IMG/VR virus record: IMGVR_UViG_3300035703_000009
Span: 62,001-126,000 of that record
Direction: 5' to 3' (one strand)
DNA: 64,000 nt
Positions within the stretch are counted from its first letter, which is position 1; every line of letters begins with the position of its first letter. Position numbers and translations under genes: made by a program. Shown here piece after piece: positions 2,136 through 55,669 of the stretch. The notes beneath the pieces are model-generated. The model was not told the DNA's origin and did no database searches. It saw only the letters and a program-made list of their open reading frames with translations.

Positions 2136-3731
2136 TTATTTTGGAGCTAATTTTTTTATCTTAAGAGCCTCTAAAAAGTATTGAGGCACCTTCTTATTAT
2201 CTAATATCTGATCAAAGCACTCGTCGAGAATATAGGTCTCAGCCCAGTCCTCTTCGCTACGAACGCTACGTCCGTATGCTTGTAATAGGTCGATCAGGGT
2301 CTTCCAGTTATACCATTCCGGCTTGATCTCAAGTCTACGCTTGATTTTTTTACTCACCAAGTTTGGAAAAGGCACTTTAAGTATGACCTGAAACCTTGAA
2401 AAGTCGTCCTTTAAGTCGATACCGGTAAACATCGATGGAGATACTAATACTGTTTCTAGGCTCGAAGTTAAATGTGTCTCTAAAGATTTTTCTCTGGTAG
2501 CTGAGTCATGGAAGATGAATCGCTTGTCCTTGATTGAGGCCTTGATCCAGTTGCTTAGCTCATAGTTTGAGGTATGAACGATGCCTTTGTGCTTGGCGTT
2601 TTTTTCAAGGATCTTGGTCAAGATCGGAACTGCTCTAGCAAAGGTCTCCTTCTTGTTGTAGTATGACATCTTGCCAAACTTAAGATAGATGACTGGTCGC
2701 TTTTCGGCGTCAAACGGGCAGGGCAGGGCAAGGTGAGTCGACTCCTCAGCATCCACTCCCATGATGTAGGAGAAAAGCTCCTTATCGAGGATGGTGCCTG
2801 ACATAAAGATCACATGGTCGTAATTGTCCCAAAAGGTCTCCTTAAGGTAGATGTTACCCCAAATCGGCTCGACTAGGACTCGAACGTGACCATAATTGTC
2901 AAGCTCCTTTTCAAAGGACCAGTTAGTCTCGTAGTTCTTGCGATCGTTGACGAATCGATTGAGCTTACACATCGTCTTGTCAACATGATCGGCTTTTTGC
3001 ACTAGTGCCAGCTTCTTTGCCCTGGCCCTGATCTCTTTTGCTTCTTCGATGAGGTCAGCTGCCTTGGCGGCAAGCAGCGGAACGAGGATGGATTCCACCC
3101 AGTCTGCAGCTTCAGTAAGCGAAGTGATGTTGTCTAGGTCGCGTTCCATCCATGGTTGCCAGACGTCTAGTAACTTTAGGCTACGTTCTGAAAAGACTGA
3201 TGCGACAAAGTCACAAAAGGTCTCTTCAAAGGAATGAGCCTCGTCGATTATCAATAGCTTTGCACCACGCTCTGCCAGGAGGTCTGGCGAGTACATCGCA
3301 TAAGAAGTAATTAAGTGGAAATTGGTGAGGCTCAGCGGGTTCCTGACAAAGTGAGATTGGGCTATCTTGTATGGACATACTTCGCACTTGTTCTCAGTAG
3401 ACTTATTGAGTATGCTGGCATCGCCACAGCTCATGTTCTGCTTACGACACCAGTAATTGCCCTTGCCTTTTAGATTAGCGATAAAACTAAAGTCTCGGAT
3501 GTACTGGTCTTGCAAGATCTTGGTGTTGGTCAATACATCGATTTTTGCTTTCTTGTTGATGGTCTTGCGATACCACTCAGCAATCATGATTGCAGCGTAA
3601 GACTTGCCTGTGCCAGTGGGAGCATCGATCATCATGAACTTTTTGTCCCTGTTTTGAATTGAGTCCTTGACGAACTCTAAGATCTGATCTTGTTGAGGTC
3701 TGGGTGTGAATTCTAGTTTTATTTCTGCCAT
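2136..3731 (-). CDS. DinG/XPD-family SF2 helicase with probable FeS cluster
   Basis: Q motif PRPQQ, Walker A APTGTGKS, DEAH, MSGT, QAYGRSVRS, four Cys in WCRKQNMSC...CEVCPY. Confidence 0.9.
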   Translation of the reverse strand: MAEIKLEFTPRPQQDQILEFVKDSIQNRDKKFMMIDAPTGTGKSYAAIMIAEWYRKTINKKAKIDVLTNTKILQDQYIRDFSFIANLKGKGNYWCRKQNMSCGDASILNKSTENKCEVCPYKIAQSHFVRNPLSLTNFHLITSYAMYSPDLLAERGAKLLIIDEAHSFEETFCDFVASVFSERSLKLLDVWQPWMERDLDNITSLTEAADWVESILVPLLAAKAADLIEEAKEIRARAKKLALVQKADHVDKTMCKLNRFVNDRKNYETNWSFEKELDNYGHVRVLVEPIWGNIYLKETFWDNYDHVIFMSGTILDKELFSYIMGVDAEESTHLALPCPFDAEKRPVIYLKFGKMSYYNKKETFARAVPILTKILEKNAKHKGIVHTSNYELSNWIKASIKDKRFIFHDSATREKSLETHLTSSLETVLVSPSMFTGIDLKDDFSRFQVILKVPFPNLVSKKIKRRLEIKPEWYNWKTLIDLLQAYGRSVRSEEDWAETYILDECFDQILDNKKVPQYFLEALKIKKLAPK

Positions 3732-5794: not shown

Positions 5795-6609
5795 TGAGCA
5801 AACTTTTCGAAAAATATGGAGACGAGGCTAGCGCAAAAGACGGAGGTTTCGTCTTCCAAGCAATCATTAGCCATGATGTAAAGTGGGAGATAGTTAACGG
5901 GGAGACCAAAATAGACCCGAAAAAAATTAGTTCCACTTTACACCAAGTTGATGTTTTTCCCGATATCAAGCTTTCTGAAGGTAGTGCTCTTTCCACATAT
6001 GTGATGCTGAGCGAAGTCAACATTCTAAAGAGAAAATTTGAGCTGGCAAGCGAAGCCATCAAAAAGAGGCTTAAGCCCGAATATCGCCAAGAGGTCGAAT
6101 CACTAAAGGCCAGGGGACTCACCAGCGAACAACGCAAAGCGCTTAACCTGCGACACTTTCAAAACACTTATTATGAAGCATCGGTCGTGACCGATCGGCT
6201 AGTATTACGCGAAGTTTCAACCAGCGGAATCGACTCAGGCTCGCCGAGAATCACCTTAAAGATCTCGACTGGCATGGTTGACACGCTGGATGCCAAGCCA
6301 GCTAAGACTTGGGAGGCATTCACTATCAAAGTAGACGGATCTACTCAGCTAGTCTTAAATAACTCGACTGAAGCTATTTCTTCTATCCAAGAGTTTGATG
6401 AGATTGAGAAGGTAAACGATGTGGTCTTTAGGACCATCTTGCCATCTCTGCTACTAGAATTCAAAGGCGACCGAGTATTCATAGACACACTATCAAACAG
6501 GTCAGCTCAAGTAGCGGTAGGCTCGCTTACTGACTATGATAACCTGTTTACAGTATCGGACAAAACAGTAACGGGTCAAACTGCTCCGCCTGCCGCGATA
6601 AATAAATAA
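5794..6609 (+). CDS. Hypothetical late protein
   Basis: 271 aa ORF in the late operon. Confidence 0.75.
   Translation: MSKLFEKYGDEASAKDGGFVFQAIISHDVKWEIVNGETKIDPKKISSTLHQVDVFPDIKLSEGSALSTYVMLSEVNILKRKFELASEAIKKRLKPEYRQEVESLKARGLTSEQRKALNLRHFQNTYYEASVVTDRLVLREVSTSGIDSGSPRITLKISTGMVDTLDAKPAKTWEAFTIKVDGSTQLVLNNSTEAISSIQEFDEIEKVNDVVFRTILPSLLLEFKGDRVFIDTLSNRSAQVAVGSLTDYDNLFTVSDKTVTGQTAPPAAINK
6598..6605 (+). promoter_or_regulatory. Putative late promoter ATAAATAA
   Basis: 25 nt upstream of the tail tube ATG. Confidence 0.65.
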
Positions 6610-9823: not shown

Positions 9824-9835
9824 TAATCTCGACAA

Positions 9836-9843
9836 ATAAATAA
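9836..9843 (+). promoter_or_regulatory. Putative late promoter ATAAATAA
   Basis: Upstream of the plus-strand operon starting at 9858. Confidence 0.6.
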
Positions 9844-9857
9844 ATAAAATAGAATAG

Positions 9858-17519: not shown

Positions 17520-18092
17520 TTAGTGAATTCTTTTTTTGTGTATTTTGCCGTCTAAGATCTTGTACTTATTGTTAAGTTCGATGAGTAAGATCTCCTGTAT
17601 TTCTGTTTCCATCATATCGAACAGCTTCTTATACTCAATCGAAGTAATGGAGGATATTACCTCCATTGCATAGATCGGGTTGTAGAACAAATTCTCCGAT
17701 CCCTTCTTATCTAGTGAATCATTGATGCGATTAAACAAGAAATTGACCTCATCTTTAGACAGCTTAAGCTTGTTTGAAAACGGTTTATTTGTCTTTTTGT
17801 TTATTAGTATAATTATCTCTGGATCCTTTTGGACGAACTCAAAGATGCTATTCAAGATTAGTTTTGTATCAAGCGCATCTTCATACTCATATAAGTCTTT
17901 AAGATATTCGTTTGAGTAATCACTTGAGACCGATATTTTTCTTCGATATTCATAGTCTTCAGATTCAACTAGACCATCTCCAGTGTTGTATCTATTGTTA
18001 AAGATCTTGTCTTCTTTTAGTATGGTTTCCTCTACTGAAGTATCATCCTCGATTGGGTCCTCGATTTCTTCGTATTGATCGTCGTTGTACAT
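17520..18092 (-). CDS. Hypothetical protein with acidic N-terminus
   Basis: 190 aa ORF in the replication operon. Confidence 0.75.
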   Translation of the reverse strand: MYNDDQYEEIEDPIEDDTSVEETILKEDKIFNNRYNTGDGLVESEDYEYRRKISVSSDYSNEYLKDLYEYEDALDTKLILNSIFEFVQKDPEIIILINKKTNKPFSNKLKLSKDEVNFLFNRINDSLDKKGSENLFYNPIYAMEVISSITSIEYKKLFDMMETEIQEILLIELNNKYKILDGKIHKKRIH

Positions 18093-22622: not shown

Positions 22623-22916
22623 TTATTGGTTATTTTGAATGATTTTAGCTCCTGCGGTCTCAAGTGTTAGCACTAGGTTTTCCTTACGAAGCTCTTCGAC
22701 TTCTTCCTGTGCTTTCTTGATTAGGTCAGCGATCTCAATGTCGCTGGCGCCGATTGCATTTAGGACCTGAAAGGTCACATCCTCTATGTTACTCGTGCGA
22801 TAAGGCAAGACATGATATTCCTCGCCAAATTTCTTTTCTAAGCCTTCACACGCAGTCTGTACTTGCTGAACATCAGCTTTAGTCGGAAAGCCTATGATAA
22901 AAATTGGTTTTGCCAT
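22623..22916 (-). CDS. Hypothetical protein
   Basis: 97 aa; TAATG-coupled to the polymerase fragment. Confidence 0.7.
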   Translation of the reverse strand: MAKPIFIIGFPTKADVQQVQTACEGLEKKFGEEYHVLPYRTSNIEDVTFQVLNAIGASDIEIADLIKKAQEEVEELRKENLVLTLETAGAKIIQNNQ

Positions 22917-24343
22917 TACTTCTTTGCATTTTTTAAACTCTTGATCTCGCCTTGGGTTTTAATACGTTCGTCATAAAGTCTGGTCAAGATCGTACGTGCT
23001 ACTGAATCGTTTGCGCTAGAAAAAACCGTGTCGTTTTTAGTGAAGATTTCTCCACCTTTTATCTTGACCCTGTCTTTCTTACCAAGATAAGTGTCTGGCG
23101 AGATGTTGAACTGTATTTGAATATTTGGGTACATCGATGAGAAGTCATAACATGACACGTAGTTATAGTAGTCTGGGTTTGGCTTCATAACATATGCTCC
23201 CTCATAAGTTGCGTCTTCCGGTGTTCCTTCTCCCCACGGAAGTTTCATCATCTTTAGGTTCTTGTTTAAGAACTCACGACACATGAGGATCTCTGCAATA
23301 TAGACTGGGCTGAATACTTTATTGACCTCTACTTGTGCGACGTTAGCAATTGAGTAAGCCACATCAAGAAGAGAGAGCTTGTCCTCAATTAACTTAACGA
23401 GCACTACGTCGATCACATTGTAAAGAGTAAAGAGATAGGTGTCCTTTTGAAAATCAAAGAAGGTAGAGTATTTATGTTTCAGCTTGTTTGCACCGAGTAC
23501 TAGGCCGGCAATATGGTCGAGCTTGTAGTTTTCAACTACCTTGTAGGGCTTTAGCTTTTCAAACACTTGCATATAGTCTAAGACTCCTAAATGGGATGGG
23601 ATCTTGTTCTTTGACACATGAGAGCGAGAAGGCATGTTTTGCATGGAATCGAGCTTTAGGTTACGTGCACGATTCATCAGGTACTTCCAGTCAAATTCGG
23701 TCACGTTCCAGCCTGTCACAAACGATAGCTTTGGAACGATGTTATGAAAGTAGAAGCTCATCAACTCTTCTTCGCTATTGAAGTATTTGTATTTGATCTT
23801 AAACTCTTGCTGGAATAACCTGGCGTCCTCTGGTTTTAATGGAATGATCTTTCTAAAGTAGTCATTGACTTCTACTTCCATACGTGAGATCTCTTCCTGA
23901 GTTAACCCGTTTGGATGGTCATCGTCGTTTAGGATGGAAAGTATGTAGGTGACGTTGTCTTCGTTACAGAAGGAGATGAGACCGACTGGCATGCGAGCGC
24001 CTTCTGGATCTGGAAAAGAGTCATTTATTAGCTTGATCTCGATATCGAGGTAGGTCTTCTTTGGTAAGTTGTCAAAGCTGTAAATTGCTTCAAGCTCACT
24101 AGGGCTTAGTTTGTCTTGGATTAACTCTTGCACTCTAAACTGACTCACGTATTTACCTCCAGTTTGACTCTTCTTCACGAAACGACCGTCCCAGTTACGT
24201 TGCGTAGTGGCGGTCTGTGACTCAACCCAGTTGAAAAGCTCGTGATCGAGCACCCTTTTTCTGATGAAGGCTATCTTACCCGCCGCATCGTAATATGAAA
24301 TGAGTAGTGTGCCGTCTTCTAATACTTCTGAGCCTATTATCAT
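22916..24343 (-). CDS. Family B DNA polymerase, N-terminal part only (exonuclease plus motif A)
   Basis: ExoI YLDIEI, ExoII GWNVTEFD, ExoIII YNVID, YEGAYV, motif A YDFSSMYPNI; motifs B and C absent. Confidence 0.88.
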   Translation of the reverse strand: MIIGSEVLEDGTLLISYYDAAGKIAFIRKRVLDHELFNWVESQTATTQRNWDGRFVKKSQTGGKYVSQFRVQELIQDKLSPSELEAIYSFDNLPKKTYLDIEIKLINDSFPDPEGARMPVGLISFCNEDNVTYILSILNDDDHPNGLTQEEISRMEVEVNDYFRKIIPLKPEDARLFQQEFKIKYKYFNSEEELMSFYFHNIVPKLSFVTGWNVTEFDWKYLMNRARNLKLDSMQNMPSRSHVSKNKIPSHLGVLDYMQVFEKLKPYKVVENYKLDHIAGLVLGANKLKHKYSTFFDFQKDTYLFTLYNVIDVVLVKLIEDKLSLLDVAYSIANVAQVEVNKVFSPVYIAEILMCREFLNKNLKMMKLPWGEGTPEDATYEGAYVMKPNPDYYNYVSCYDFSSMYPNIQIQFNISPDTYLGKKDRVKIKGGEIFTKNDTVFSSANDSVARTILTRLYDERIKTQGEIKSLKNAKK

Positions 24344-42075: not shown

Positions 42076-42097
42076 CAGATTTATTTATTAGAAACTA

Positions 42098-42154: not shown

Positions 42155-44553
<2,399 letters not shown>

Positions 44554-46736: not shown

Positions 46737-48275
46737 TTATTTGCTGGCTAATTCAGCCACTCTTTTTCTGATTTGAGTTAATGTTGTTTGATTGTAAAGC
46801 TTACCGTCTTCAAAGATAGTTTGCAAAAGACCAGTTGCTTCTTGCTCTGGTGTGCATTCAGTATGGACAACATACTCACCGTCCTCTTCAGACACTGCAA
46901 CGAATCCTTTAAGTGATTTCTTGGTGCCGTCATCCGTTATTGGGTCCTTGTAGATGTTGTAACCTACTCCATTGATCTCAAACCATGCGCCTTTGGCTGC
47001 AAAGCCTAAAGCATCGCGAGTGTTACATTGGTAGGTAAAGGAACCAACGCCTAAGACGATGTTAGTGGTTGCAAAACCATTCTCAGCAAGCTTCTCGTAA
47101 ATCTGAATCTGCCGTTCTAGTGTGATTGAGTCACCGTATATCGCTCCAATGTGAGAGTCAAGCAACTTGTAACCGGCCTCAGTGGTAGTGCCGCCGAATA
47201 TTTCCCATAGGAGTTGGATTACTCCTTTCTTTTCGTCCGTTGAAATCCACTTGCCAGTCTCATTAACTCGATAGCCAAGGACTGATCTATCTACTCCATG
47301 TTCAACAGTAACTTCATAGTCATGGTAGCCACAAACGATTCGAACCGGATCTCCTGAGTCAGGGCGTATCACCAGCTTACCGTTGCGTGCCATGATCTTG
47401 GCCTTGTTTTCAGGCAAGTATTTAGTGATCAGAGTCCAAAGGTCAAATGTGTCGGATACGATGGATAAGATTCCTTCTGGGAATTGATCAAGGTAATAAT
47501 CGATCATCTTGCTCTCACCCATGGTAAAGATGCACGTGGTAGAAACTGAGTGTTCTGACGCATTCACTGAGCTGATGCAGACTTCATTAGTCGGCTCATC
47601 GTAGAAGTAGCGAGCAGCCGGAATGACTACTAGTGTGTCTGAGCCGCGAAAGGATGTGGCATGACCCAGGCCAGATGTCATCATGTCCCAAGGAGACAGA
47701 CCACGTGCGCTAAAGTCGTGAGCTAAGTAGTCAATCAACCACTTGTTTGCAGGATCTGTCTTTGCTACCCATTGTGCTAGATTGCGACGATACTGCAGAG
47801 CGATCGTTGCTGATGTAGTTGGTTTCCAAGCAATGGAACTGATGATCGTCTCTAGATAAAGAGTTAACCACGCAAAACCATCAACGGTATTGATGAAGGT
47901 CATGTGAGGTATGTTTGGATTGGTCTCTATTCCCTCAGGAAGAGACTTGATTCGTATCGGTAAGTAACCCAGGTCGTGTAGTGCTTCAAAGTGAGAGCCA
48001 TCATATTTTAGACCTAGGTACATGCACATGTCTTTTGTAAAGATTAATGCAGCATCTTTAGGTAGCTCAAAAAAGTTTTCTTGAAACTCGTCACGAAGCC
48101 AGCGAACTACCAGTTGCTGGCCGAACGACAGGATCTTTTTGACGCCAGTTGGCGCGTACTTTAGGCTACGTGGGATCCATGTGCCATATAGTTTTTGGGT
48201 GCCTGGCGCAAGCATTCTTTTATGGCCTATCTTATAGCCATCTGTGTAGTACAGGGCAGTTGGTTTAAAACTCAT
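46737..48275 (-). CDS. NAMPT-family enzyme (Namat-like, NARP1)
   Basis: TDGYKIGH, HDFSARG, ASEHSV, SIVSDTFD, VIRPDSGDP, IYGDSIT, KKSLKG. Confidence 0.92.
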   Translation of the reverse strand: MSFKPTALYYTDGYKIGHKRMLAPGTQKLYGTWIPRSLKYAPTGVKKILSFGQQLVVRWLRDEFQENFFELPKDAALIFTKDMCMYLGLKYDGSHFEALHDLGYLPIRIKSLPEGIETNPNIPHMTFINTVDGFAWLTLYLETIISSIAWKPTTSATIALQYRRNLAQWVAKTDPANKWLIDYLAHDFSARGLSPWDMMTSGLGHATSFRGSDTLVVIPAARYFYDEPTNEVCISSVNASEHSVSTTCIFTMGESKMIDYYLDQFPEGILSIVSDTFDLWTLITKYLPENKAKIMARNGKLVIRPDSGDPVRIVCGYHDYEVTVEHGVDRSVLGYRVNETGKWISTDEKKGVIQLLWEIFGGTTTEAGYKLLDSHIGAIYGDSITLERQIQIYEKLAENGFATTNIVLGVGSFTYQCNTRDALGFAAKGAWFEINGVGYNIYKDPITDDGTKKSLKGFVAVSEEDGEYVVHTECTPEQEATGLLQTIFEDGKLYNQTTLTQIRKRVAELASK

Positions 48276-48284
48276 ATTGTAGAT

Positions 48285-48773
48285 TTATTTTTTAAGTATG
48301 ACTATGGTTACTATACAATCTTTTAGCTCGCGTTTAATGATTTGCTTGATTTTTTCCCAGTCTCCACCGGCAAGACCCGCACCAATCATCGGTAAACCGA
48401 TATGCATGCCCTTAAAGTTATGGTTGATCTTTCGCATGCACAGGGTGATTGCATCATAATCGACTGGCACGGCATCACCATCTGCGTGGTTACGTCCATA
48501 TTTGTATTGAGTGTATGCATTAAGCACGAAAACTCCGCGTTTCATGTCCGCCCTAGAGACCAGTACCCCATCAATCTGACCAAGCTTATTGATGTCGCCT
48601 CGATATTGAGTGTTTTCTAACTTAAATAGGTCACAACCAAATGCCGATGCCATGTGAGGAGCTAAGCCGGCTCCCATGGTGCACATGCAGTTACAACCGT
48701 GTGCGATCACGTCAAACTCTCCATCTTTTGCAAGGGTGATTAAGTTGCCAAACACTTCAGTATAGTTATTCAT
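48285..48773 (-). CDS. Macrodomain (ADP-ribose binding/hydrolase)
   Basis: GNL, IAHGCNCMCTMGAGLA, NAYTQ, PMIGAGLAGGDW; start moved to ATG 48773. Confidence 0.88.
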   Translation of the reverse strand: MNNYTEVFGNLITLAKDGEFDVIAHGCNCMCTMGAGLAPHMASAFGCDLFKLENTQYRGDINKLGQIDGVLVSRADMKRGVFVLNAYTQYKYGRNHADGDAVPVDYDAITLCMRKINHNFKGMHIGLPMIGAGLAGGDWEKIKQIIKRELKDCIVTIVILKK

Positions 48774-49263
48774 GGTTTTCGAGTATTTGTAGTGAGGCCT
48801 GAAGTAGGTCATCGAACTTTGAGTAGTTTGGAACGCGGTAACGATCACACACGATGTCAACGTTACCCTTGCGCCAAAAACCTTCTGGACAGCACACTAG
48901 TAGCTTATCAGAGTCTGCAAACTTGCCTAGCTCTAATAGGGAGATAGGTGACTTGGTGTTAGGATCAAAATACATGATGATTAGAGTTGCCTCCTCCAAT
49001 GCGGTCAATTCCCAGTTTACTTGTTGGTAGAAGTTGGCGTTTTCAAACGTTTGTTCCCAACTGGAGTCCCAGTCTTCTCTACGCGGACTGTAAACTACTA
49101 CTTCTACTCCATTTTCTTCGTAAAACTGGATGGCTTTCTTTTGCCAGTCCTCTGCCTTACCCATTTCAATGCTGCCTGCAAGAAAGATGGAAGGCTTGGT
49201 TGAATCTGAGTCTCTAAAGATCGGAGCTGGTGGTTTGATAACGTGGACGGATTGATTTTTCAT
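48766..49263 (-). CDS. Nucleoside 2-deoxyribosyltransferase-like N-glycosidase
   Basis: IFLAGSIE, PRREDWD, QVNWE, PISLLELG with the catalytic Glu. Confidence 0.8.
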   Translation of the reverse strand: MKNQSVHVIKPPAPIFRDSDSTKPSIFLAGSIEMGKAEDWQKKAIQFYEENGVEVVVYSPRREDWDSSWEQTFENANFYQQVNWELTALEEATLIIMYFDPNTKSPISLLELGKFADSDKLLVCCPEGFWRKGNVDIVCDRYRVPNYSKFDDLLQASLQILENHE

Positions 49264-49278
49264 AAAGTATATGTTATT

Positions 49279-50163
49279 TTAAAAGACATCAAGTTGACCT
49301 ACTACTGAGTTTTCAATGTCTGAATAGCTATTGCTACAGTAGATGCCGTCAAGATGCTTACTAAGCTCATCAAAGCCTGCTGAAAATATGCCGTGTGAAA
49401 CGACTAGGTAAATCTTGCCAGTTCTTTCAGGCTGGGTCTTTTTGATCTCTTCGGCGATGTTTAAGAAAGTTCGACCGCCGTCACAGATGTCATCGATGAT
49501 GATTAGATTCTTTGAGTAGTGATCGATTCTGACTGGCACGTGAGTCTTACTCAGTTTACCATCGGTGTCTCGATACTTGCTACAGGTAAGGACCTCACCT
49601 GTGAATTGTAGGTTCTTAGCAACAGTATAGATCTTCTTTAGACTACCTGCGTCAGGTGAAACAAAGACGCATGATTCTAGGAAAGAGCTGACTGCTAGGT
49701 CTCGATTAGCTGCCACACGACTGATGAATGAGCTGACTATTTGAGTATTGTCAACCACTTTAAGTCGATTGATGCAGGCAGCTGCGACATCTGAGTGAAC
49801 ATCAATGCAGGTGACGCTCTCGAACTCCAATGAGTTTAGGATAGGAGCGATCACGTCTCGTAAGTAAGAAGTTCCACCTTCAACGAACTGTCGATCGCTG
49901 CGAGCTCCCATCACGTAAGGAACATACAGGTGGATTTCTTTGACTCCAAGATTACGAAGAGCTTTGGTAGCGCAGATGATTATCTCAAGATCCTTAAAGG
50001 AGTTGAAACGTGATCTGATCTCGACCATGTCTTTTTTTGGATTGATGCTTGAATGAATGGATACTGCATCAAGCAACTGAATGTCCTGCTGGCCGTCTGG
50101 AAAACGGGAGATTTTGTACTTGATTTCTGAGCAAGACTGGTCAACTAAATTTAAGATTTTCAT
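49279..50163 (-). CDS. Ribose-phosphate pyrophosphokinase-like enzyme (Adps-like, NARP1)
   Basis: FPDGQ, PYVMGARSDR, DVHS, SPDAGS, IIDDICDGGRTF, VSHGIFS. Confidence 0.9.
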   Translation of the reverse strand: MKILNLVDQSCSEIKYKISRFPDGQQDIQLLDAVSIHSSINPKKDMVEIRSRFNSFKDLEIIICATKALRNLGVKEIHLYVPYVMGARSDRQFVEGGTSYLRDVIAPILNSLEFESVTCIDVHSDVAAACINRLKVVDNTQIVSSFISRVAANRDLAVSSFLESCVFVSPDAGSLKKIYTVAKNLQFTGEVLTCSKYRDTDGKLSKTHVPVRIDHYSKNLIIIDDICDGGRTFLNIAEEIKKTQPERTGKIYLVVSHGIFSAGFDELSKHLDGIYCSNSYSDIENSVVGQLDVF

Positions 50164-51104
50164 TCAAAACTGAATTTATTTGGAGTTAATAAAAGACTAC
50201 TTTCTGTTGATGCTGAGTCGGTACGATATTTTAGGACTGCTAGATCTTTGGCTTTTGCCTCGACCTCAACATCCACATCCAAGTCATAGTGAGGAATGAC
50301 CTCATAAATGTAATCGGCATGCGATCGATTGAGAGCGCTGGCATCTTCGTACAATCTAGTACTACTATAGTGCTGCAGCGGTTTATGTTTGTACCAAGTA
50401 GAAGCTGCAAGGTGTGCGGCTTCTTGCGGAGAGAGACCGCTTGTGCAGAATCTATGATGTAGGTGGTCAAAGGTGATCGGGCAGCCTACTCCATTATAGA
50501 TGCCGTCATATAGGTCAAGCACGCTGAACTGGGTGGCTTTATCGTCATTTTCGACAACAAGGCGGGCCTTGGTAGAGTCAGCCAGGCGATCGAAGTTTGT
50601 GCAAAACCGCTGGATTGCAGAAGGCTTGTCGCCATATGTGCCGCCGATATGGATGTTGATTGGTGCGGCATAGCTTTTAGGCAGCTGCATGAGATCCATG
50701 ATGCGTGCGTGCTGGTCCAGATCATATATCGTCTTGTCGACTATACTTTGAGTAGGAGAAGCAAGCACATCGAACTGGCCTGGGTGAAAGGAGATGCGCA
50801 AGTTGTGTTGGTGCACGAACTCGCCGATTTGCTGCATGATCCCTACTAGCTTATCATAGTTAGGTAGCTGTTCGAACATATACTCGCTCATCCAAGGAAA
50901 TATGTCACTGGACATGCGATAGACTCTAATGTCATGCTCTAGGTTCCACTGCAGTATCTTACAAAGATCTTGTAGGTTCTGTTCAGCAAGTAGAGCCGCT
51001 CGAGCAATGCCTTGTTCTAGCCATGTCTTTTTGACCATGCCTCGATTTATAGTAATCCCTTGCTCACGCAAGCTAAGGTTGATGCAACAATATCCTAATC
51101 TCAT
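50160..51104 (-). CDS. uvsE: UV-damage endonuclease
   Basis: RLGYCCIN, RMSSDIFP, FHPGQF, VENDD, FDHLHH, SHAD, EAKAKD. Confidence 0.92.
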   Translation of the reverse strand: MRLGYCCINLSLREQGITINRGMVKKTWLEQGIARAALLAEQNLQDLCKILQWNLEHDIRVYRMSSDIFPWMSEYMFEQLPNYDKLVGIMQQIGEFVHQHNLRISFHPGQFDVLASPTQSIVDKTIYDLDQHARIMDLMQLPKSYAAPINIHIGGTYGDKPSAIQRFCTNFDRLADSTKARLVVENDDKATQFSVLDLYDGIYNGVGCPITFDHLHHRFCTSGLSPQEAAHLAASTWYKHKPLQHYSSTRLYEDASALNRSHADYIYEVIPHYDLDVDVEVEAKAKDLAVLKYRTDSASTESSLLLTPNKFSFE

Positions 51105-51142
51105 ATTGCTAATGTACTACAAATGGGTGAAAACTAAAAATT

Positions 51143-51242
51143 CCGCGAGCGGGCGCCCTACTAGAGTAGCTATTATAGTAATAATTATAGTAAGAATAGA
51201 GTAATACTATAGTACTACTATAGCTACACCCACCCACCACCC
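51143..51242. other. Structured intergenic element at a strand switch (candidate origin or ncRNA)
   Basis: GC clamp, 62 nt imperfect AT-rich inverted repeat at 51166-51227, and a CCCACCCACCACCC tract. Confidence 0.45.
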
Positions 51243-51246
51243 ATTG

Positions 51247-51324
51247 TTGTACTAGCAAAAAAGCTTATGGTTTTGAGAATAAATATCATATTGAGTAGAA
51301 CTCTTTAATAACTTCAACGTATAA
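51247..51324. promoter_or_regulatory. Back-to-back bipartite promoters: minus AAACC-N16-GTACAA (51247-51273) and plus GAACT-N16-GTATAA (51298-51324)
   Basis: Both match the recurring motif. Confidence 0.65.
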
Positions 51325-51355
51325 TCATTTTAGGCCTTAAAATTATCCACAATGA

Positions 51356-52015
51356 ATGACCATTGTCAGCATAGACTTTTCCATCTTATATCCTGGAGTC
51401 TGCATCTGCAGAGATTTTACCAAGTTTAAGTGGATAGCGTTAGCTAATACTAACGTTAGAAAAAAGGATTCAGATAACTTTGATTACGTTAACTCAACTT
51501 ATCCAAACATAAAGATCTTAAGAACTACTACTAGAAGAAAAAAAGAGCAAGAATATCATCTAACTGAAAGAACCAAGCTAATCAATTACCTTGAAGCAAT
51601 CGATCTACTCGTTTCTGAAATAGAAAAAGAAGTAAATGGAGAAGACGTTCTTGCATGTCTCGAAGGAATATCCTTTGGTTCTAGCGGTAACTCGCTAGTT
51701 GACATCTCACAAGCGACTGGCATCTTAAAGTATCACTTAACTACTAGAATCCTAAAGAATCAACACGATAGATTTTTTATCTTTAGCCCAAGCGAGCTCA
51801 AAAACGCGATAGGTTGCAAAGGTAATGCAAACAAAAACGACATACTAGCGAAATTTAAGAGCGACCCAATCATAGAATCGGTAAAGCAATCTGACTTATT
51901 TAAACTCGTCAACCAAGAAAAATGGATATTAGAAGGAGACAAGATCCTTTCGCCTATTACTGACATGATTGATTCCTATTTAGGGGTGGTCAAGGTACAT
52001 GGGCTCTTAAAATAA
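51356..52015 (+). CDS. RuvC-like Holliday junction resolvase
   Basis: SIDFS..PGVC, LEGISFGS, SPSELK, DMIDSY. Confidence 0.8.
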   Translation: MTIVSIDFSILYPGVCICRDFTKFKWIALANTNVRKKDSDNFDYVNSTYPNIKILRTTTRRKKEQEYHLTERTKLINYLEAIDLLVSEIEKEVNGEDVLACLEGISFGSSGNSLVDISQATGILKYHLTTRILKNQHDRFFIFSPSELKNAIGCKGNANKNDILAKFKSDPIIESVKQSDLFKLVNQEKWILEGDKILSPITDMIDSYLGVVKVHGLLK

Positions 52016-52423: not shown

Positions 52424-52435
52424 CCTAAATACCTA

Positions 52436-52443
52436 ATAAATAA
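52436..52443 (+). promoter_or_regulatory. Late promoter ATAAATAA
   Basis: Upstream of the large structural operon. Confidence 0.7.
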
Positions 52444-52461: not shown

Positions 52462-55400
52462 ATGCTAGTCCAAAACCTAGAATTCTTTGATAAGTTTGGC
52501 CAAAACCTCAACCTAAACTTTAATGTGGCCTCTGGGGTATGGGAGGGCAAGATATACTTTGAACCTATATCAAACTATCTATTTGACAATGAAAACCTCT
52601 TTGTCTTAGAAAAAGTGGGAACTACTTATAAGTTTCCTCAGCTAGCAAACAATCAGCAATACTTTGAGTTTGCTTGGGTTTCAAACAAGACATCAAACGA
52701 ATTCTTTTTGTATGAGGTAGTTCGTGACATTCAGTTAGATGAGAAGTTCATCACCAAGATCGATAAATCAGTCATCAAGTATTCAGACATTGATCCTGTG
52801 AACACCAACTCTCTATTGGACGTGTCAATACCTTTACAAGTAAACATAGCCTTCTGTCCTACTGACGAGGTCTCTTTTGAGAGAACTCTACAGATGTTTT
52901 GGTTTAACGGCACTAGCCGAGTAAAGATCGCTGAGTTATACTTTTATGGAGAAGGAGTGGAAGAGGACACTCGATTTAGGAATTGGGCCGAAAACTTTGG
53001 CATTAGGTTTCTACGCGAGGACGCAAATATCCTTAAGAACTATGACATCAAAGAGGCTTTTCCAGACATGGAAGCCCTTAATCAGATCAGAAAGGAGCTC
53101 TTAGTGAGCAAAGACCAGGTGTACCCATACGTCGGTACTTATAAGGGACTCGTTAACTTTATCAATTTGCTTGGATACAAGGATGTGCTAAGGATCAAGG
53201 AATATTGGTTGAACTACAATCAAAGGTCGGCTTACTACAACAAGATGACCCTAATCGACATCAGCGATTACCTAGATGATGGCATCATCCAGTCGCTTGA
53301 CTTGGAGGACAAGAATCGTAACCTAAAATTTGGCAAACAATTTAAGAAGACTGAGTTTTTGGCTCTTGTTTATCAATTCACAGTCGCCACTGATAATTTC
53401 GATGACGATAACATCCCAATAGTTGAAGAGACCACTGAATTCACTGTAAACGAGATCTTCTATAAGCTGAACCTACTAAATGATAAGATCAAGAATGAGT
53501 TTCTACCGATAAATGTAAAGGTAAAGGACATAATCGGTGAGTTTATTTACTTTCAAAAGATAACTCTAACCTATTGGACCGATCCTAACCGAATCTTTGA
53601 TTACATGGTCAATGATTACGCAGAGATTGACGTTTATCCTGGGAAAGATGCGGACCTTACCTTACGTGCATTGGATCCTTTGTATCGTAGGGTCAGCGAG
53701 GTGGGCCTCGACCTTGGAGTAGCTAGGATCAACAATAACGGTTCAAAGAATCCATTTGAGTACTCTCAAGTCATCTCCACTAGGACAGAGGCTGAGAACT
53801 ACATCGAAAATATCGAGACCTTTTACACTGAGATAAAGAACCAACGAATTCCTAACCTTGGAAAGAAGCTAACTTGGGAATTCGGCGACGATCCACAACG
53901 CGTGATCGGTGCACCCACAGTTTTTACCCTTGATACTGGCAAGTTTACTTTACAGGACCTTAGGGGAGTTAGACTGGACGACTTGGATGCGATCGCACCA
54001 GGGCTTGATCCGCACTGGACTTTTCAAAACATCGATTTTAGGAACTTTTACGAGGTCAACTGGAGAATCACAAAGCCCGGACCAAACCCATATAACTTTG
54101 AGATCAGAGGCAGGATAGTAGACCTATTTGCCCTACCTCACGTATTACCCTTTGCCGGCACCTATCGAGTCATCGTTGAGCTCTTTGATTTTTCAGGAAA
54201 TGTCAGTGTCTTTAGTCGATTTGTCACAGTGCAGGACGACAAGAAACCTGAGATACTAGCAATCACCAGGCTTGAAGACAAGTTCGACTATTTCCTAGAC
54301 AACTTAAAAAACGTGAGGCTGCAAGATTTTGGAGCATCTCATCTATATTATCCAAAGGTCAATGTATTAGACAATGAAGATGCTGCTGTAAAGCTAGATC
54401 CCTATAAGAACCTATTAGAGTGGATCTCTTTTTACAAACATCGTTATGGCATGGGCCAAAGCTTATATGACGCTGAGATTTATGACTCAAACTTGGGAAC
54501 CTGGGTACCATACGCTGATACTACTCAATCTCACCCAAAGAAAGGATATTGGGGACTGGGAGAAGGCGACCTGCCAATTCAACTAAAGGACTTTAGTGAC
54601 GTTGAGGTTGGTGAACTTTATTGGATGAGAATCACTGACCTCATCTACTTGGACGATTTTAATGCAGGTTTTTACCTAATTAACCCAGCTCCAGGAAACT
54701 CAATCTTCATGTCGCTATTTTCTGAGTACGTGATCCCTAACTTTTCTACCCTAGAGGAGTTGGCAGTAATCTTAAACGATAGCGATCACCCAGGAATCAA
54801 TCTTTTTAATTACGAGGTGATTGAAGGAAAGATCCATGCACAAGCCGAATACCTAAGCAAAGAAATGTATCACATCCTTGGACATGGAGGATTTAGTCCA
54901 GGTAGTCCAGGTAGTCCAGGATTTAGTCCAGGTAGTCCAGGGTTCAGTCCTAGCCCATTTTTTGACGAGTACGTTGAAAACGGTTACGTTGAAAACGGTT
55001 ACGTAGGTAACTATTTCATCAATTCAAGCGTAAACAATACTCCTCTTACCCAAATCAATGGTACTGAGTCTAGCGACAAATACACTTTCTTTTTACCCAG
55101 AAAGGTTTTTTCGCAAAAGCTGATTGACTTTCTAACTAACATATCGCCTGTATTTGACATAGAGACTCTTTTCTTATTAGCTAAGACGAGCGACGTACTC
55201 ACTGGTGCGGTGCAAGATCCTACTTTTTGGCGAGACATCAAATGTTGGAAGTTTGTGGATGACGTGCAAATCGGCCACCTGCCTACAACCATCGACCAGA
55301 ACGCATTAAACATTAATGACATCAAGCTGTTTGAGGAAAGCTTTGCTGTTCCGGAAAATGCGATAGTCTTTTTTGTGGTAAATAGCTTAGACGGAAAAAA

Positions 55401-55662
55401 CGAGTTCTATTGGACTCTAACTGATTCTCGAACCGGTGATGTGGTCATGCAAGTGAGATCTGTGCCGTTTTTTGCATGGAAGTTTAAAGATCTTGGTACG
55501 TTTAGCCTAAGTTGCAGAGTTATCGATAACCGAGGCACTGAGTACACAAATGAGGTCAAAAACTTTGTTCAAGTTCTTGATAAAAGACAATACATCACAG
55601 GTGTCGAGAGACGACTTAACGATAGAAAGATAAAAATAATTAAGAGCGGCTCTCTGAGCTAA
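52462..55662 (+). CDS. Large structural protein (baseplate/tail-associated, PKD/Ig-like elements)
   Basis: Late promoter; GTYKGLVNFINLLGY baseplate-wedge-like motif; GTYRVIVELFD and GTFSLSCRVID Ig-like strands. Confidence 0.6.
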   Translation: MLVQNLEFFDKFGQNLNLNFNVASGVWEGKIYFEPISNYLFDNENLFVLEKVGTTYKFPQLANNQQYFEFAWVSNKTSNEFFLYEVVRDIQLDEKFITKIDKSVIKYSDIDPVNTNSLLDVSIPLQVNIAFCPTDEVSFERTLQMFWFNGTSRVKIAELYFYGEGVEEDTRFRNWAENFGIRFLREDANILKNYDIKEAFPDMEALNQIRKELLVSKDQVYPYVGTYKGLVNFINLLGYKDVLRIKEYWLNYNQRSAYYNKMTLIDISDYLDDGIIQSLDLEDKNRNLKFGKQFKKTEFLALVYQFTVATDNFDDDNIPIVEETTEFTVNEIFYKLNLLNDKIKNEFLPINVKVKDIIGEFIYFQKITLTYWTDPNRIFDYMVNDYAEIDVYPGKDADLTLRALDPLYRRVSEVGLDLGVARINNNGSKNPFEYSQVISTRTEAENYIENIETFYTEIKNQRIPNLGKKLTWEFGDDPQRVIGAPTVFTLDTGKFTLQDLRGVRLDDLDAIAPGLDPHWTFQNIDFRNFYEVNWRITKPGPNPYNFEIRGRIVDLFALPHVLPFAGTYRVIVELFDFSGNVSVFSRFVTVQDDKKPEILAITRLEDKFDYFLDNLKNVRLQDFGASHLYYPKVNVLDNEDAAVKLDPYKNLLEWISFYKHRYGMGQSLYDAEIYDSNLGTWVPYADTTQSHPKKGYWGLGEGDLPIQLKDFSDVEVGELYWMRITDLIYLDDFNAGFYLINPAPGNSIFMSLFSEYVIPNFSTLEELAVILNDSDHPGINLFNYEVIEGKIHAQAEYLSKEMYHILGHGGFSPGSPGSPGFSPGSPGFSPSPFFDEYVENGYVENGYVGNYFINSSVNNTPLTQINGTESSDKYTFFLPRKVFSQKLIDFLTNISPVFDIETLFLLAKTSDVLTGAVQDPTFWRDIKCWKFVDDVQIGHLPTTIDQNALNINDIKLFEESFAVPENAIVFFVVNSLDGKNEFYWTLTDSRTGDVVMQVRSVPFFAWKFKDLGTFSLSCRVIDNRGTEYTNEVKNFVQVLDKRQYITGVERRLNDRKIKIIKSGSLS
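54886..55004 (+). repeat. In-frame tandem repeats: (GF)SPG units and 2.3 copies of TACGTTGAAAACGGT
   Basis: Repeated AGTCCAGG units; YVENG-YVENG-YV. Confidence 0.85.
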
Positions 55663-55669
55663 TAAATAA
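55662..55669 (+). promoter_or_regulatory. Late promoter ATAAATAA
   Basis: Upstream of the ORF at 55689. Confidence 0.65.

What the first reader, a model, noticed from the sequence alone, without database searches (positions are those of the whole stretch)
51105..51355. Divergent intergenic element: promoter, G-tract, long AT hairpin, GC clamp (candidate R-loop origin or ncRNA)
This is the largest non-coding gap in the window and lies at a strand switch. A leftward promoter (51247-51273) would start a transcript at about GGGUGGUGGGUGGG, which is G-quadruplex and R-loop prone. Next comes a 62 nt imperfect hairpin (8 + 6 + 7 bp; GTAGCTAT...ATAGCTAC at 51166-51227) built of TAG/TAT/TAC units, then GGGCGCCCGCUCGCGG and a U run. 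T4 origins are a middle promoter plus an unwinding element that forms a persistent R-loop, so this layout fits an origin. A small RNA or a uvsE leader are the alternatives.
Basis: partly seen in the sequence, partly recalled or inferred. Interest (0 to 1): 0.6.

Follow-up and report, generated by a model that had tools for sequence, protein, structure and literature searches.

The report
Conserved promoter, G-triplets and melt-prone repeats
Between the leftward replication genes and the rightward late genes of an uncultured freshwater T4-like jumbo phage lies a single-copy non-coding element, kept in over 50 related phages, that is built like a transcription-primed replication origin, though nothing yet shows that it works as one.

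Summary
The whole layout recurs in 54 distinct relatives, always divergent from the RuvC-like/late-sigma operon. The parts are an AAAACC box, a -10-like box, three G-triplets, 70-100 nt of AT-rich repeats and, in the window's clade, a GC block.

The leftward neighbour varies (uvdE, a 3'-5' exonuclease, small ORFs), so the element is not a uvdE leader.

The "hairpin" is better described as about six 11-nt tandem units (TRF period 11, 4.5 copies). Its stems never covary, several relatives keep the repeats with no hairpin, and the antisense strand folds as well as the sense strand. Rfam gives no match and there is no canonical terminator.

The repeat array is the least stable 60-bp duplex in the whole 207-kb genome, and it ranks in the top three of its locus in 39 of 54 relatives.

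A promoter, G-clusters on the non-template strand, an unwinding element and a strand switch together match T4 oriF/oriG and recall mitochondrial LSP-CSB II. I favour an R-loop origin at about 0.4. An RNA leader or ncRNA, or a protein-binding array, remain live rivals.

GC skew switches nearby, but with the wrong polarity and confounded by gene orientation. No RNA data exist.

The parts
51269..51274 (-). Upstream box of the leftward promoter P1 (AAAACC on the minus strand).
   Evidence: This is the most conserved non-G position of the element. AAAC[CT] starts 28-29 nt before the G-tract in 49 of 55 unique relatives. It resembles the AAACTT box of the genome-wide promoter class.
51247..51254 (-). 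P1 -10-like box (TAGTACAA on the minus strand).
   Evidence: It matches the (T/G)AGTAYAW box found upstream of many genes in G000: 21 of 72 hits lie in the 9% of the genome that is non-coding. -10-like A/T-rich boxes occupy this place in all relatives. It does not pass the strict sigma-70 scan.
51229..51242 (-). G-tract GGGTGGTGGGTGGG at the predicted P1 start, on the non-template strand.
   Evidence: It is the only non-coding match to GGG-N3-5-GGG-N-GGG in the 207-kb genome, and the looser GGG-N1-8-GGG-N1-2-GGG has a single match in complete relative G002. Three G-triplets with variable loops are kept in 64 of 71 related loci. One lineage, L086, lacks them.
51160..51228 (.). TA-rich array of about six 11-12-nt units (T[AT]CT / TACTATA cores). 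It doubles as an imperfect inverted repeat and is the candidate unwinding element.
   Evidence: TRF gives 51174-51223, period 11, 4.5 copies, score 56. Unit spacing is 11, 11, 12, 12 nt. The inverted arms are 51166-51183 and 51210-51227. It holds the least stable 60-bp duplex of 207,050 windows in G000, z +3.6. In the clade the autocorrelation peaks at lag 11.
51143..51158 (-). GC block (GGGCGCCCGCUCGCGG on the minus strand) that bounds the array.
   Evidence: It is present in all window-clade relatives and in a few others, with variable sequence. In the window it can pair with the G-tract: duplex -25.2 kcal/mol, z -4.5, with many G-U pairs. Across the family this pairing is only weakly above chance, mean z -0.9.
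51130..51142 (-). A/U run after the GC block (AAUUUUUAGUUUU).
   Evidence: Read directly from the sequence. It is not a canonical terminator. It is absent in L064/L006 and in the distant clades. It may belong to the P2 upstream region.
51122..51129 (-). CACCCAUU, a perfect 8-nt complement of AAUGGGUG at the start of the G-tract.
   Evidence: the repeat finder pair I11 is 100% complementary and is used in the window MFE fold. Its position is not conserved in relatives.
51112..51119 (-). P2, a second leftward -10-like box (TAGTACAT) 7 nt before the uvdE ATG (51102-51104).
   Evidence: It has the same box type as other gene-proximal promoters. A TAGTATAAT-like box sits just before the leftward gene in relatives of all clades.
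51278..51286 (+). Rightward late-promoter-like box AATAAATAT.
   Evidence: ATAAAT and TAAATA are the most enriched 6-mers upstream of genes. WATAAATAW has 9 matches in the window against 3.8 expected, mostly just before gene starts. It is conserved as TATTTAT on the other strand in the window's clade.
51298..51325 (+). Rightward promoter for the RuvC-like/sigma operon (GAACTCTTT, 13 nt, GTATAAT).
   Evidence: GTATAAT at 51319-51325 belongs to the enriched class. AGAACTTTT-like and GTATAA boxes are conserved in relatives.

Best explanation
The element is a cis-acting module of the 'promoter plus downstream unwinding element' type, that is, a transcription-primed (R-loop) replication origin.

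Proposed mechanism:
1. An early or middle-type promoter, P1, fires leftward.
2. The first 14 nt of the transcript are three G-triplets on the non-template strand. This gives a very stable rG:dC hybrid and possibly a DNA:RNA hybrid G-quadruplex, which would nucleate an R-loop.
3. The R-loop would spread into the next ~70 bp, a TA-rich 11-bp repeat array that is the easiest stretch of the genome to melt.
4. In the window's clade a GC block bounds the array.
5. The RNA 3' end would prime leftward leading-strand synthesis by the phage's T4-type replisome.

Shown: the anatomy, its conservation, its single copy, its position at the early/late divergence next to the late-sigma operon, its minimal duplex stability, and the T4-type replication genes.

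Inferred, with no data: that P1 is active, that an R-loop forms, and that DNA synthesis starts here.
For: Conservation:
- The architecture is kept in 54 unique relatives whose RuvC-like protein is as little as 39% identical. The element always lies divergent from RuvC-like/sigma, 81-134 nt from its ATG in nearly all relatives (two at about 320 nt, with an inserted segment). The AT-rich sequence itself turns over between clades.
- The AAAC[CT] box and the G-tract keep a spacing fixed to within 1 nt.
- The G-triplets are invariant while their loops vary in sequence and length (1 and 3-8 nt). That pattern fits G-cluster or G4-type function better than a protein site or a Watson-Crick helix.

Unwinding element:
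- The array is the least stable 60-bp duplex in G000 (0 of 207,050 windows are weaker). It ranks among the 16 weakest regions in the complete relative G002.
- It is the weakest in its locus in 23 of 54 relatives and in the top three in 39 of 54, mean z +2.7.

Copy number:
- The element is single-copy in both G000 and G002.

Replisome genes present: a family-B polymerase, a DnaB/gp41-like helicase, a gp32-like SSB, UvsX, gp46/47-like proteins, topoisomerase II and a FEN/RNase H-class 5'-3' exonuclease.

Precedents from the literature:
- T4 oriF/oriG are about 100 bp: a non-late promoter plus an AT-rich DUE that holds a persistent R-loop, and the DUE sequence is exchangeable. T4 origins sit at transcription divergences with compositional shifts (PMC3016281).
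Against: - There is no direct evidence of transcription, an R-loop or initiation. No RNA run holds the sequence.
- Cumulative GC skew has a local maximum near the element in G000 and G002, which is the polarity of a bacterial terminus rather than an origin. Third-position skew follows gene orientation.
- Within the window's clade the short AGTA/TACT blocks are far more conserved than their spacers (96.7% against 78.8% column identity). A sequence-free unwinding element does not predict this.
- One lineage (L086) keeps P1, the array and the GC block but has no G-tract.
- T4 oriF has neither G-clusters nor repeats.
- No MotA homologue was found.
- Intergenic TA-rich DNA between promoters is often the weakest duplex for trivial reasons.
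Confidence: 0.4

Rival explanations
1. The element acts as RNA. The P1 transcript (about 115-125 nt in the window) folds into a long hairpin whose closing stem pairs the 5' G-tract with the GC block and further C-rich segments. It would work as a 5' stabiliser or attenuating leader of the leftward operon, or as a small regulatory RNA with a G-rich seed.
For: - The window RNA has an MFE of -42.5 kcal/mol, z -3.5, with 0 of 200 shuffles folding as well.
- The G-tract/GC-block duplex is -25.2 kcal/mol, z -4.5, with five G-U pairs.
- Similar G-tract partners appear in L065, L066, L098, L095 and L129.
- RNAalifold draws a 22-pair hairpin for 11 close relatives, with 97.5% of cells paired.
- In L064/L006 the transcript would run into a small ORF with no U run in between.
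Against: - No pair shows a compensatory change in either alignment.
- The stems are invariant sequence blocks.
- Relatives such as L077, L091 and L085 keep only direct TACTTTA repeats and fold no better than shuffles.
- The antisense strand folds as well or better: mean z -2.0 against -1.3, and for the AT-rich part -19.3 against -16.4 kcal/mol.
- Family-wide G-tract pairing is weak, mean z -0.9.
- Rfam has no family match; the best hit is 18.9 bits against a gathering score of 72.
- There is no canonical terminator.
- The leftward gene differs between clades.
Confidence: 0.25
2. The array is a DNA site for a phage or host protein. Short AGTA/TACT(TTA) blocks repeated every ~11 bp lie on one face of the helix. 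They would nucleate a wrapped nucleoprotein complex that regulates the four promoters of the gap, for example as a roadblock for P1 or an upstream activator for P2. Such a complex could also help to open an origin.
For: - 6-8 units lie at 10-12-nt spacing in all window-clade relatives.
- The autocorrelation peak at lag 11 is 0.42 against about 0.30 background.
- TRF gives period 11.
- The blocks are near-invariant while the spacers vary.
- TACT units persist where their would-be pairing partners are gone (L023/L024, L077, L091).
- The unit resembles both the -10 box (TAGTA) and the -30 box (AAACTTT) of the phage's own promoter class.
- In one lake strain the array is replaced while the flanks are kept.
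Against: - The repeated unit and its period differ between clades: CTTAG at 7-9 nt, or a plain long inverted repeat.
- There is no candidate binding protein. No MotA was found and the neighbours are repair and recombination enzymes.
- Tandem units can arise by slippage in unconstrained AT-rich DNA.
- This reading does not explain the invariant G-triplets.
Confidence: 0.2
3. The gap holds only ordinary divergent and tandem promoters. Everything between P1 and P2 is a drifting AT-rich spacer with slippage repeats and has no function of its own, or it is merely the leader of uvdE.
For: - Four promoter-like boxes account for much of the conservation.
- The array sequence turns over quickly between clades and even between strains.
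Against: - The G-triplets, their fixed spacing to the AAAACC box, the 70-100-nt AT-rich length and the extreme melt-proneness are kept across clades whose flanking protein is only about 40% identical.
- The element goes with RuvC-like/sigma when uvdE is elsewhere. In the 33 loci where uvdE does not neighbour the RuvC-like gene, nothing like it lies near uvdE.
Confidence: 0.1

Closest known systems
Phage T4 oriF (uvsY) and oriG (gene 34) R-loop origins
   Same: - A non-late promoter fires into an AT-rich downstream unwinding element, together about 100 bp.
- The unwinding element's sequence is free to vary.
- The site lies at a transcription-divergence region with a shift in strand composition.
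- The phage has a T4-type replisome and a FEN/RNase H-class nuclease (PMC3016281).
   Different: - T4 oriF has no G-clusters at the transcript start and no tandem or inverted repeats.
- Its promoter depends on MotA, and no MotA homologue was found here.
- Origin activity is shown for T4 and untested here.
Mitochondrial LSP-CSB II primer switch (hybrid G-quadruplex / stable R-loop)
   Same: [quoted passage not shown]
   Different: - There are only three G3 tracts, placed at the very start of the transcript rather than about 100 nt downstream.
- An intramolecular quadruplex is not possible without a fourth tract.
- Here an AT-rich array follows the tracts.
- The polymerases are unrelated, and nothing has been tested.
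T4 oriE iterons and plasmid/lambda iteron origins
   Same: Evenly spaced short direct repeats sit at a candidate origin, which an early promoter transcribes away from the late genes (PMC3016281).
   Different: - T4 oriE lies inside gene 5, and its 12-nt repeats have no shown role.
- Plasmid iterons are 17-22 bp and sit beside their initiator gene.
- Here the units are 11 nt, differ between clades and have no initiator gene beside them.
Small RNAs or 5' leaders with a terminal stabilising hairpin
   Same: The promoter-proximal 5' end is sequestered in a long stem, and in the window's clade a GC stem and a U run follow.
   Different: There is no covariation, no sense-strand bias, no canonical terminator and no Rfam match, and the hairpin is absent in several relatives.

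Membership tests
T4-type R-loop origin (oriF/oriG) | A non-late promoter directs transcription into the element. | tested here: inconclusive
   Conserved -30 and -10-like boxes at fixed spacing fit the phage's own promoter class. There is no strict sigma-70 match and no transcript data.
T4-type R-loop origin (oriF/oriG) | [quoted passage not shown] | tested here: met
   It is the weakest 60-bp duplex in the 207-kb genome. It ranks in the top three of the locus in 39 of 54 relatives.
T4-type R-loop origin (oriF/oriG) | A MotA-dependent middle promoter. | tested here: not met
   PF09114 (MotA_activ) finds nothing in the 81%-complete genome. T4 oriE is reported to use an early promoter instead.
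T4-type R-loop origin (oriF/oriG) | A persistent R-loop, and autonomous replication of a plasmid carrying the element during infection. | not testable with these tools
   This needs bench work on an unknown host.
T4-type R-loop origin (oriF/oriG) | A T4-type replisome able to use an R-loop. | tested here: met
   PolB, a DnaB/gp41-like helicase, a gp32-like SSB, UvsX and a 5'-3' exonuclease are present. The clamp, the clamp loader and gp59 were not looked for.
G-quadruplex / hybrid-G4 priming site (CSB II type) | [quoted passage not shown] | tested here: met
   Three G3 tracts lie at the predicted start and are conserved in 64 of 71 loci. The rule is taken from PMC4176368.
G-quadruplex / hybrid-G4 priming site (CSB II type) | Four G-tracts for an intramolecular quadruplex. 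| tested here: not met
   The four-tract pattern has no match in the genome.
Iteron origin | An array of direct repeats that bind an initiator encoded nearby. | tested here: not met
   Repeats are present. The units are 11 nt and specific to each clade. The neighbours are UvdE, a RuvC-like protein and a sigma factor, with no Rep-like gene.
Structured non-coding RNA | A conserved secondary structure supported by covariation, or a match to a curated family. | tested here: not met
   There are no compensatory pairs, the shuffle controls equal the observed values, and Rfam gives nothing above gathering score.
Intrinsic terminator | A GC-rich stem of at least 5 bp followed directly by a U run. | tested here: not met
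   The scan finds none in 50900-51600. By eye the stems are 3-4 bp, with 2-13 nt before the U run.

The most novel reading that the evidence does not exclude
A whole family of uncultured freshwater T4-like jumbo phages starts replication at one fixed site by transcription. Three G-triplets at the 5' end of an early transcript would lock an R-loop, or an RNA:DNA hybrid quadruplex, beside the weakest duplex of the genome. This would be a phage counterpart of the mitochondrial LSP-CSB II primer switch. The site lies back to back with the operon for the late sigma factor, so origin firing and the switch to late transcription could be physically coupled.
Probability: 0.3. Interest if true: 0.7.

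Novelty: new variant of a known kind. Interest (0 to 1): 0.55.

Why it matters
Outside T4 itself, the replication origins of T4-like and jumbo phages are almost unknown. Even in T4, the rules for R-loop formation at origins are listed as an open question (PMC3016281).

This element gives a sharply defined candidate of about 130 bp, with natural variants in more than 50 lineages. The variants include a G-tract-less lineage and a strain in which the array is swapped. They could show whether G-clusters plus an unwinding element are enough to make an origin.

If the element instead acts as RNA or as a protein-binding array, it is still the best-conserved non-coding feature of a widespread lake phage group. 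That group was found in runs from 19 studies.

Tried and rejected
- Public phage records. DNA searches (near and distant) found nothing. A protein search with the RuvC-like gene found only matches of 26-27% identity. There is therefore no annotated relative to lean on.
- Rfam. The gathering and E-value modes gave no family. No tRNA or tmRNA was found in the window.
- Sigma-70 and terminator scan. It found nothing at P1 or at the GC block.
- RNA covariation. Two alignments and a pair count gave no compensatory change.
- Sense-versus-antisense folding. It showed no strand bias.
- G-tract/downstream duplex test. It is strong in the window but weak family-wide.
- GC skew as origin evidence. I rejected it. 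The switch is near the element in two genomes, but the polarity is that of a terminus, the effect is about 0.03, and third-position skew tracks gene orientation.
- uvdE leader. Rejected on synteny.
- Small ORF at 51109-51258 (49 aa, TTG start). Rejected because relatives differ by frame-breaking indels.
- MotA. No homologue was found.
- T4 oriE iterons as a close analogue. Weakened, because oriE lies inside gene 5.
- RNA-seq support. None is available: all holders are DNA contigs. The one read-laying run, on 901 letters, gave only contig placement and variants.
- Tools not used. The large protein searches, structure prediction and complex prediction were not used. The question is about non-coding DNA, and the family scans settled the flanking genes.

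Full report
**Setting.**
The window is bases 62001-126000 of a 207,110-bp IMG/VR virus record, estimated 81% complete. It has no DNA match among 50,697 deposited phage genomes.

The genes mark a distant T4-like jumbo phage:
- topoisomerase II;
- a DnaB/gp41-like helicase;
- UvsX;
- gp46/47-like nuclease subunits;
- a gp32-like SSB;
- a family-B polymerase;
- ribonucleotide reductase;
- a 5'-3' exonuclease of the FEN/RNase H class;
- a tail sheath protein;
- GroEL;
- a gp55-like late sigma factor.

Near-identical DNA occurs in contigs from 19 studies, mostly lake-water metagenomes. None of these runs is an RNA library.

The 251-nt gap at 51105-51355 separates uvdE (minus strand; Pfam UvdE 1.7e-55) from a RuvC-like gene and the late-sigma gene (plus strand). 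Read on the minus strand, it contains in order:
1. AAAACC at 51274-51269;
2. TAGTACAA at 51254-51247;
3. GGGTGGTGGGTGGG at 51242-51229;
4. a TA-rich stretch at 51228-51160;
5. a GC block at 51158-51143;
6. AAUUUUUAGUUUU;
7. TAGTACAT, 7 nt before the uvdE ATG.

Its arms are 51166-51183 and 51210-51227, 18 nt each and 83% complementary.

By crude ORF calls the gap is among the largest in the window, but not clearly the largest.

**Conservation.**
Searching IMG/VR with UvdE gave 57 loci, and 18 of them keep the divergent uvdE/RuvC-like layout. All 18 carry the same string of features.

Searching with a RuvC-like profile gave 71 loci. In 64 of them a GGG-N1-8-GGG-N1-2-GGG tract lies upstream of, and divergent from, the RuvC-like gene. 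It sits 81-134 nt from the ATG in nearly all of them; two relatives with an inserted segment have it at about 320 nt. These make 54 distinct sequences.

In three further loci the element lies about 1.3 kb from the RuvC-like gene, with other genes in between. I estimate about 0.007 such tracts per 900 nt by chance.

The AAAC[CT] box starts 28 or 29 nt before the tract in 49 of 55 sequences.

In relatives whose RuvC-like protein is only about 40% identical, including three complete 271-kb genomes, the leftward neighbour is a 3'-5' exonuclease rather than uvdE. There the AT-rich sequence is entirely different, yet the promoter boxes, the G-triplets and a 70-100-nt AT-rich segment remain.

The element therefore belongs to the divergence point beside the late-sigma operon, not to uvdE.

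It is single-copy:
- the tight tract pattern (GGG-N3-5-GGG-N-GGG) has one non-coding match in the 207-kb genome;
- the looser GGG-N1-8-GGG-N1-2-GGG has one match in all of complete genome G002;
- the 11-nt array is the only non-coding AT-rich array of its kind found by TRF.

**Promoters.**
The 6-mers most enriched upstream of genes are ATAAAT and TAAATA, which are like the T4 late promoter, followed by GTATAA.

A second class pairs AAACTT-like boxes, 11-14 nt upstream, with (T/G)AGTAYAW. These often end 6-7 nt before an ATG.

The gap holds one box of the late type facing right (51278-51286). It also holds three of the second class:
- P2 at the uvdE start;
- a rightward one at 51298-51325.

None is a strict sigma-70 match, so their activity is inferred from recurrence and conservation.

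**What the AT-rich part is.**
In the window's clade it is a tandem array. T[AT]CT cores recur every 10-12 nt, six to eight times. TRF gives period 11 and 4.5 copies. The clade's autocorrelation peaks at lag 11, at 0.42 against about 0.30.

The units are half-palindromic (TACTATAGTA), and this produces the hairpin potential.

A second clade repeats CTTAG every 7-9 nt. A third has a plain long inverted repeat.

**RNA-structure tests.**
The window RNA folds well: -42.5 kcal/mol, z -3.5. Its G-tract can pair with the GC block through many G-U pairs, z -4.5. The family-wide picture is weaker:
- G-tract pairing averages z -0.9.
- Mean fold z is -1.3 for the sense strand and -2.0 for the antisense strand.
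- Several relatives fold no better than shuffles and contain only direct repeats.
- No predicted pair shows a compensatory change.
- The "stems" are near-invariant sequence blocks at 96.7% column identity, against 78.8% for the spacers.
- Rfam gives nothing.

The hairpin is thus not good evidence for a structured RNA, though an RNA role is not excluded.

**Unwinding test.**
With nearest-neighbour stacking energies, the array holds the least stable 60-bp duplex of all 207,050 windows of the genome (z +3.6). It is among the 16 weakest regions of the 271-kb relative.

It is the weakest of its ~5.6-kb locus in 23 of 54 relatives and in the top three in 39 of 54, mean z +2.7. This property is kept while the sequence changes.

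**GC skew.**
Cumulative skew has its maximum 1-2 kb from the element in G000, and a local maximum about 4 kb from it in G002.

However, the effect is small (about 0.03). Third-position skew follows gene orientation (-0.15). The polarity is that of a bacterial terminus. I count this as neither support nor refutation.

**Population data.**
Four lake runs carry the element unchanged. One contig from a related strain keeps uvdE's start and the G-tract/P1 region, but replaces 51119-51225 with 111 other letters. This agrees with fast turnover of the array between fixed flanks.

**Interpretation.**
Five features are conserved across the family:
1. a promoter;
2. G-clusters on the non-template strand at the transcript start;
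3. an extremely melt-prone segment of 70-100 bp;
4. a single copy;
5. a position at the early/late divergence.

These are the features of T4 oriF/oriG, which consist of a non-late promoter plus an exchangeable AT-rich unwinding element that holds a primer R-loop. T4 origins also lie at transcription divergences (PMC3016281).

The G-triplets add a feature known from the mitochondrial priming site. There, two or more non-template G-tracts give RNA:DNA hybrid quadruplexes and very stable R-loops (PMC4176368; PMC3488243).

I therefore rank the readings as follows:

| Reading | Confidence |
|---|---|
| Transcription-primed origin | about 0.4 |
| RNA leader or ncRNA | about 0.25 |
| Phased protein-binding array, which could coexist with an origin | about 0.2 |
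| Functionless spacer between promoters | about 0.1 |

Points against the origin reading:
- there are no functional data at all;
- the sequence-specific conservation of the short blocks is not predicted by a sequence-free unwinding element;
- one lineage has no G-tract;
- no MotA homologue is present;
- T4 oriF has neither G-clusters nor repeats.

- No alternative genetic code was used.

Noticed in passing
window 51112-51119 (uvdE); G000 genome positions 7726, 173359, 175106, 192906: Several genes have a TAGTAYAAT-type -10 box that ends only 6-7 nt before the ATG. They look like leaderless mRNAs, which may hint at the unknown host's translation style.
   Followed up: partly
window 6601-6609, 9835-9847, 42081-42089 (minus strand), 52435-52443, 55661-55669: An AATAAATAA box, like the T4 late promoter, sits 6-21 nt before gene starts. 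There are 9 matches in the window against 3.8 expected.
   Followed up: partly
window 22916-24343 (minus strand) and G000 17653-17955: The family-B DNA polymerase is split. The exonuclease domain and the first part of the polymerase domain are in the window. The next part of the polymerase domain is encoded about 67 kb away in a separate 493-aa frame.
   Followed up: partly
window 46737-50163 (minus strand): A nucleotide/NAD salvage cluster lies next to uvdE. It comprises a nicotinamide/nicotinate phosphoribosyltransferase, a phosphatase, a nucleoside 2-deoxyribosyltransferase-like protein and a PRPP-synthetase-like protein. A GroEL gene lies at 42155-43795.
   Followed up: no
L086, upstream of its RuvC-like gene (locus positions about 2200-2420, minus strand): One relative keeps the AAAACC box, the TACTTTA repeats and the GC block, but has no G-tract. 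Two C-triplets lie in the promoter spacer instead. It is a natural test case for the role of the G-triplets.
   Followed up: no
window 51119-51225, in run X3: One contig of a co-occurring strain replaces the whole array and GC block with 111 unrelated letters, while keeping the uvdE start and the G-tract/P1 flank. In run X7 contigs break inside the array.
   Followed up: no
G000 202547-202622 (outside the window): A GC-rich tandem array of 11-12-nt units (TCCAGGCAGGCC, about 4 copies) lies in a non-coding gap. Large 45-nt repeat arrays lie at about 58-59, 142-143 and 178-181 kb.
   Followed up: no
window 54894-54950: A 9-nt tandem repeat (TAGTCCAGG, 5 copies) lies inside the 1066-aa ORF of unknown function just downstream of the sigma gene.
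   Followed up: no
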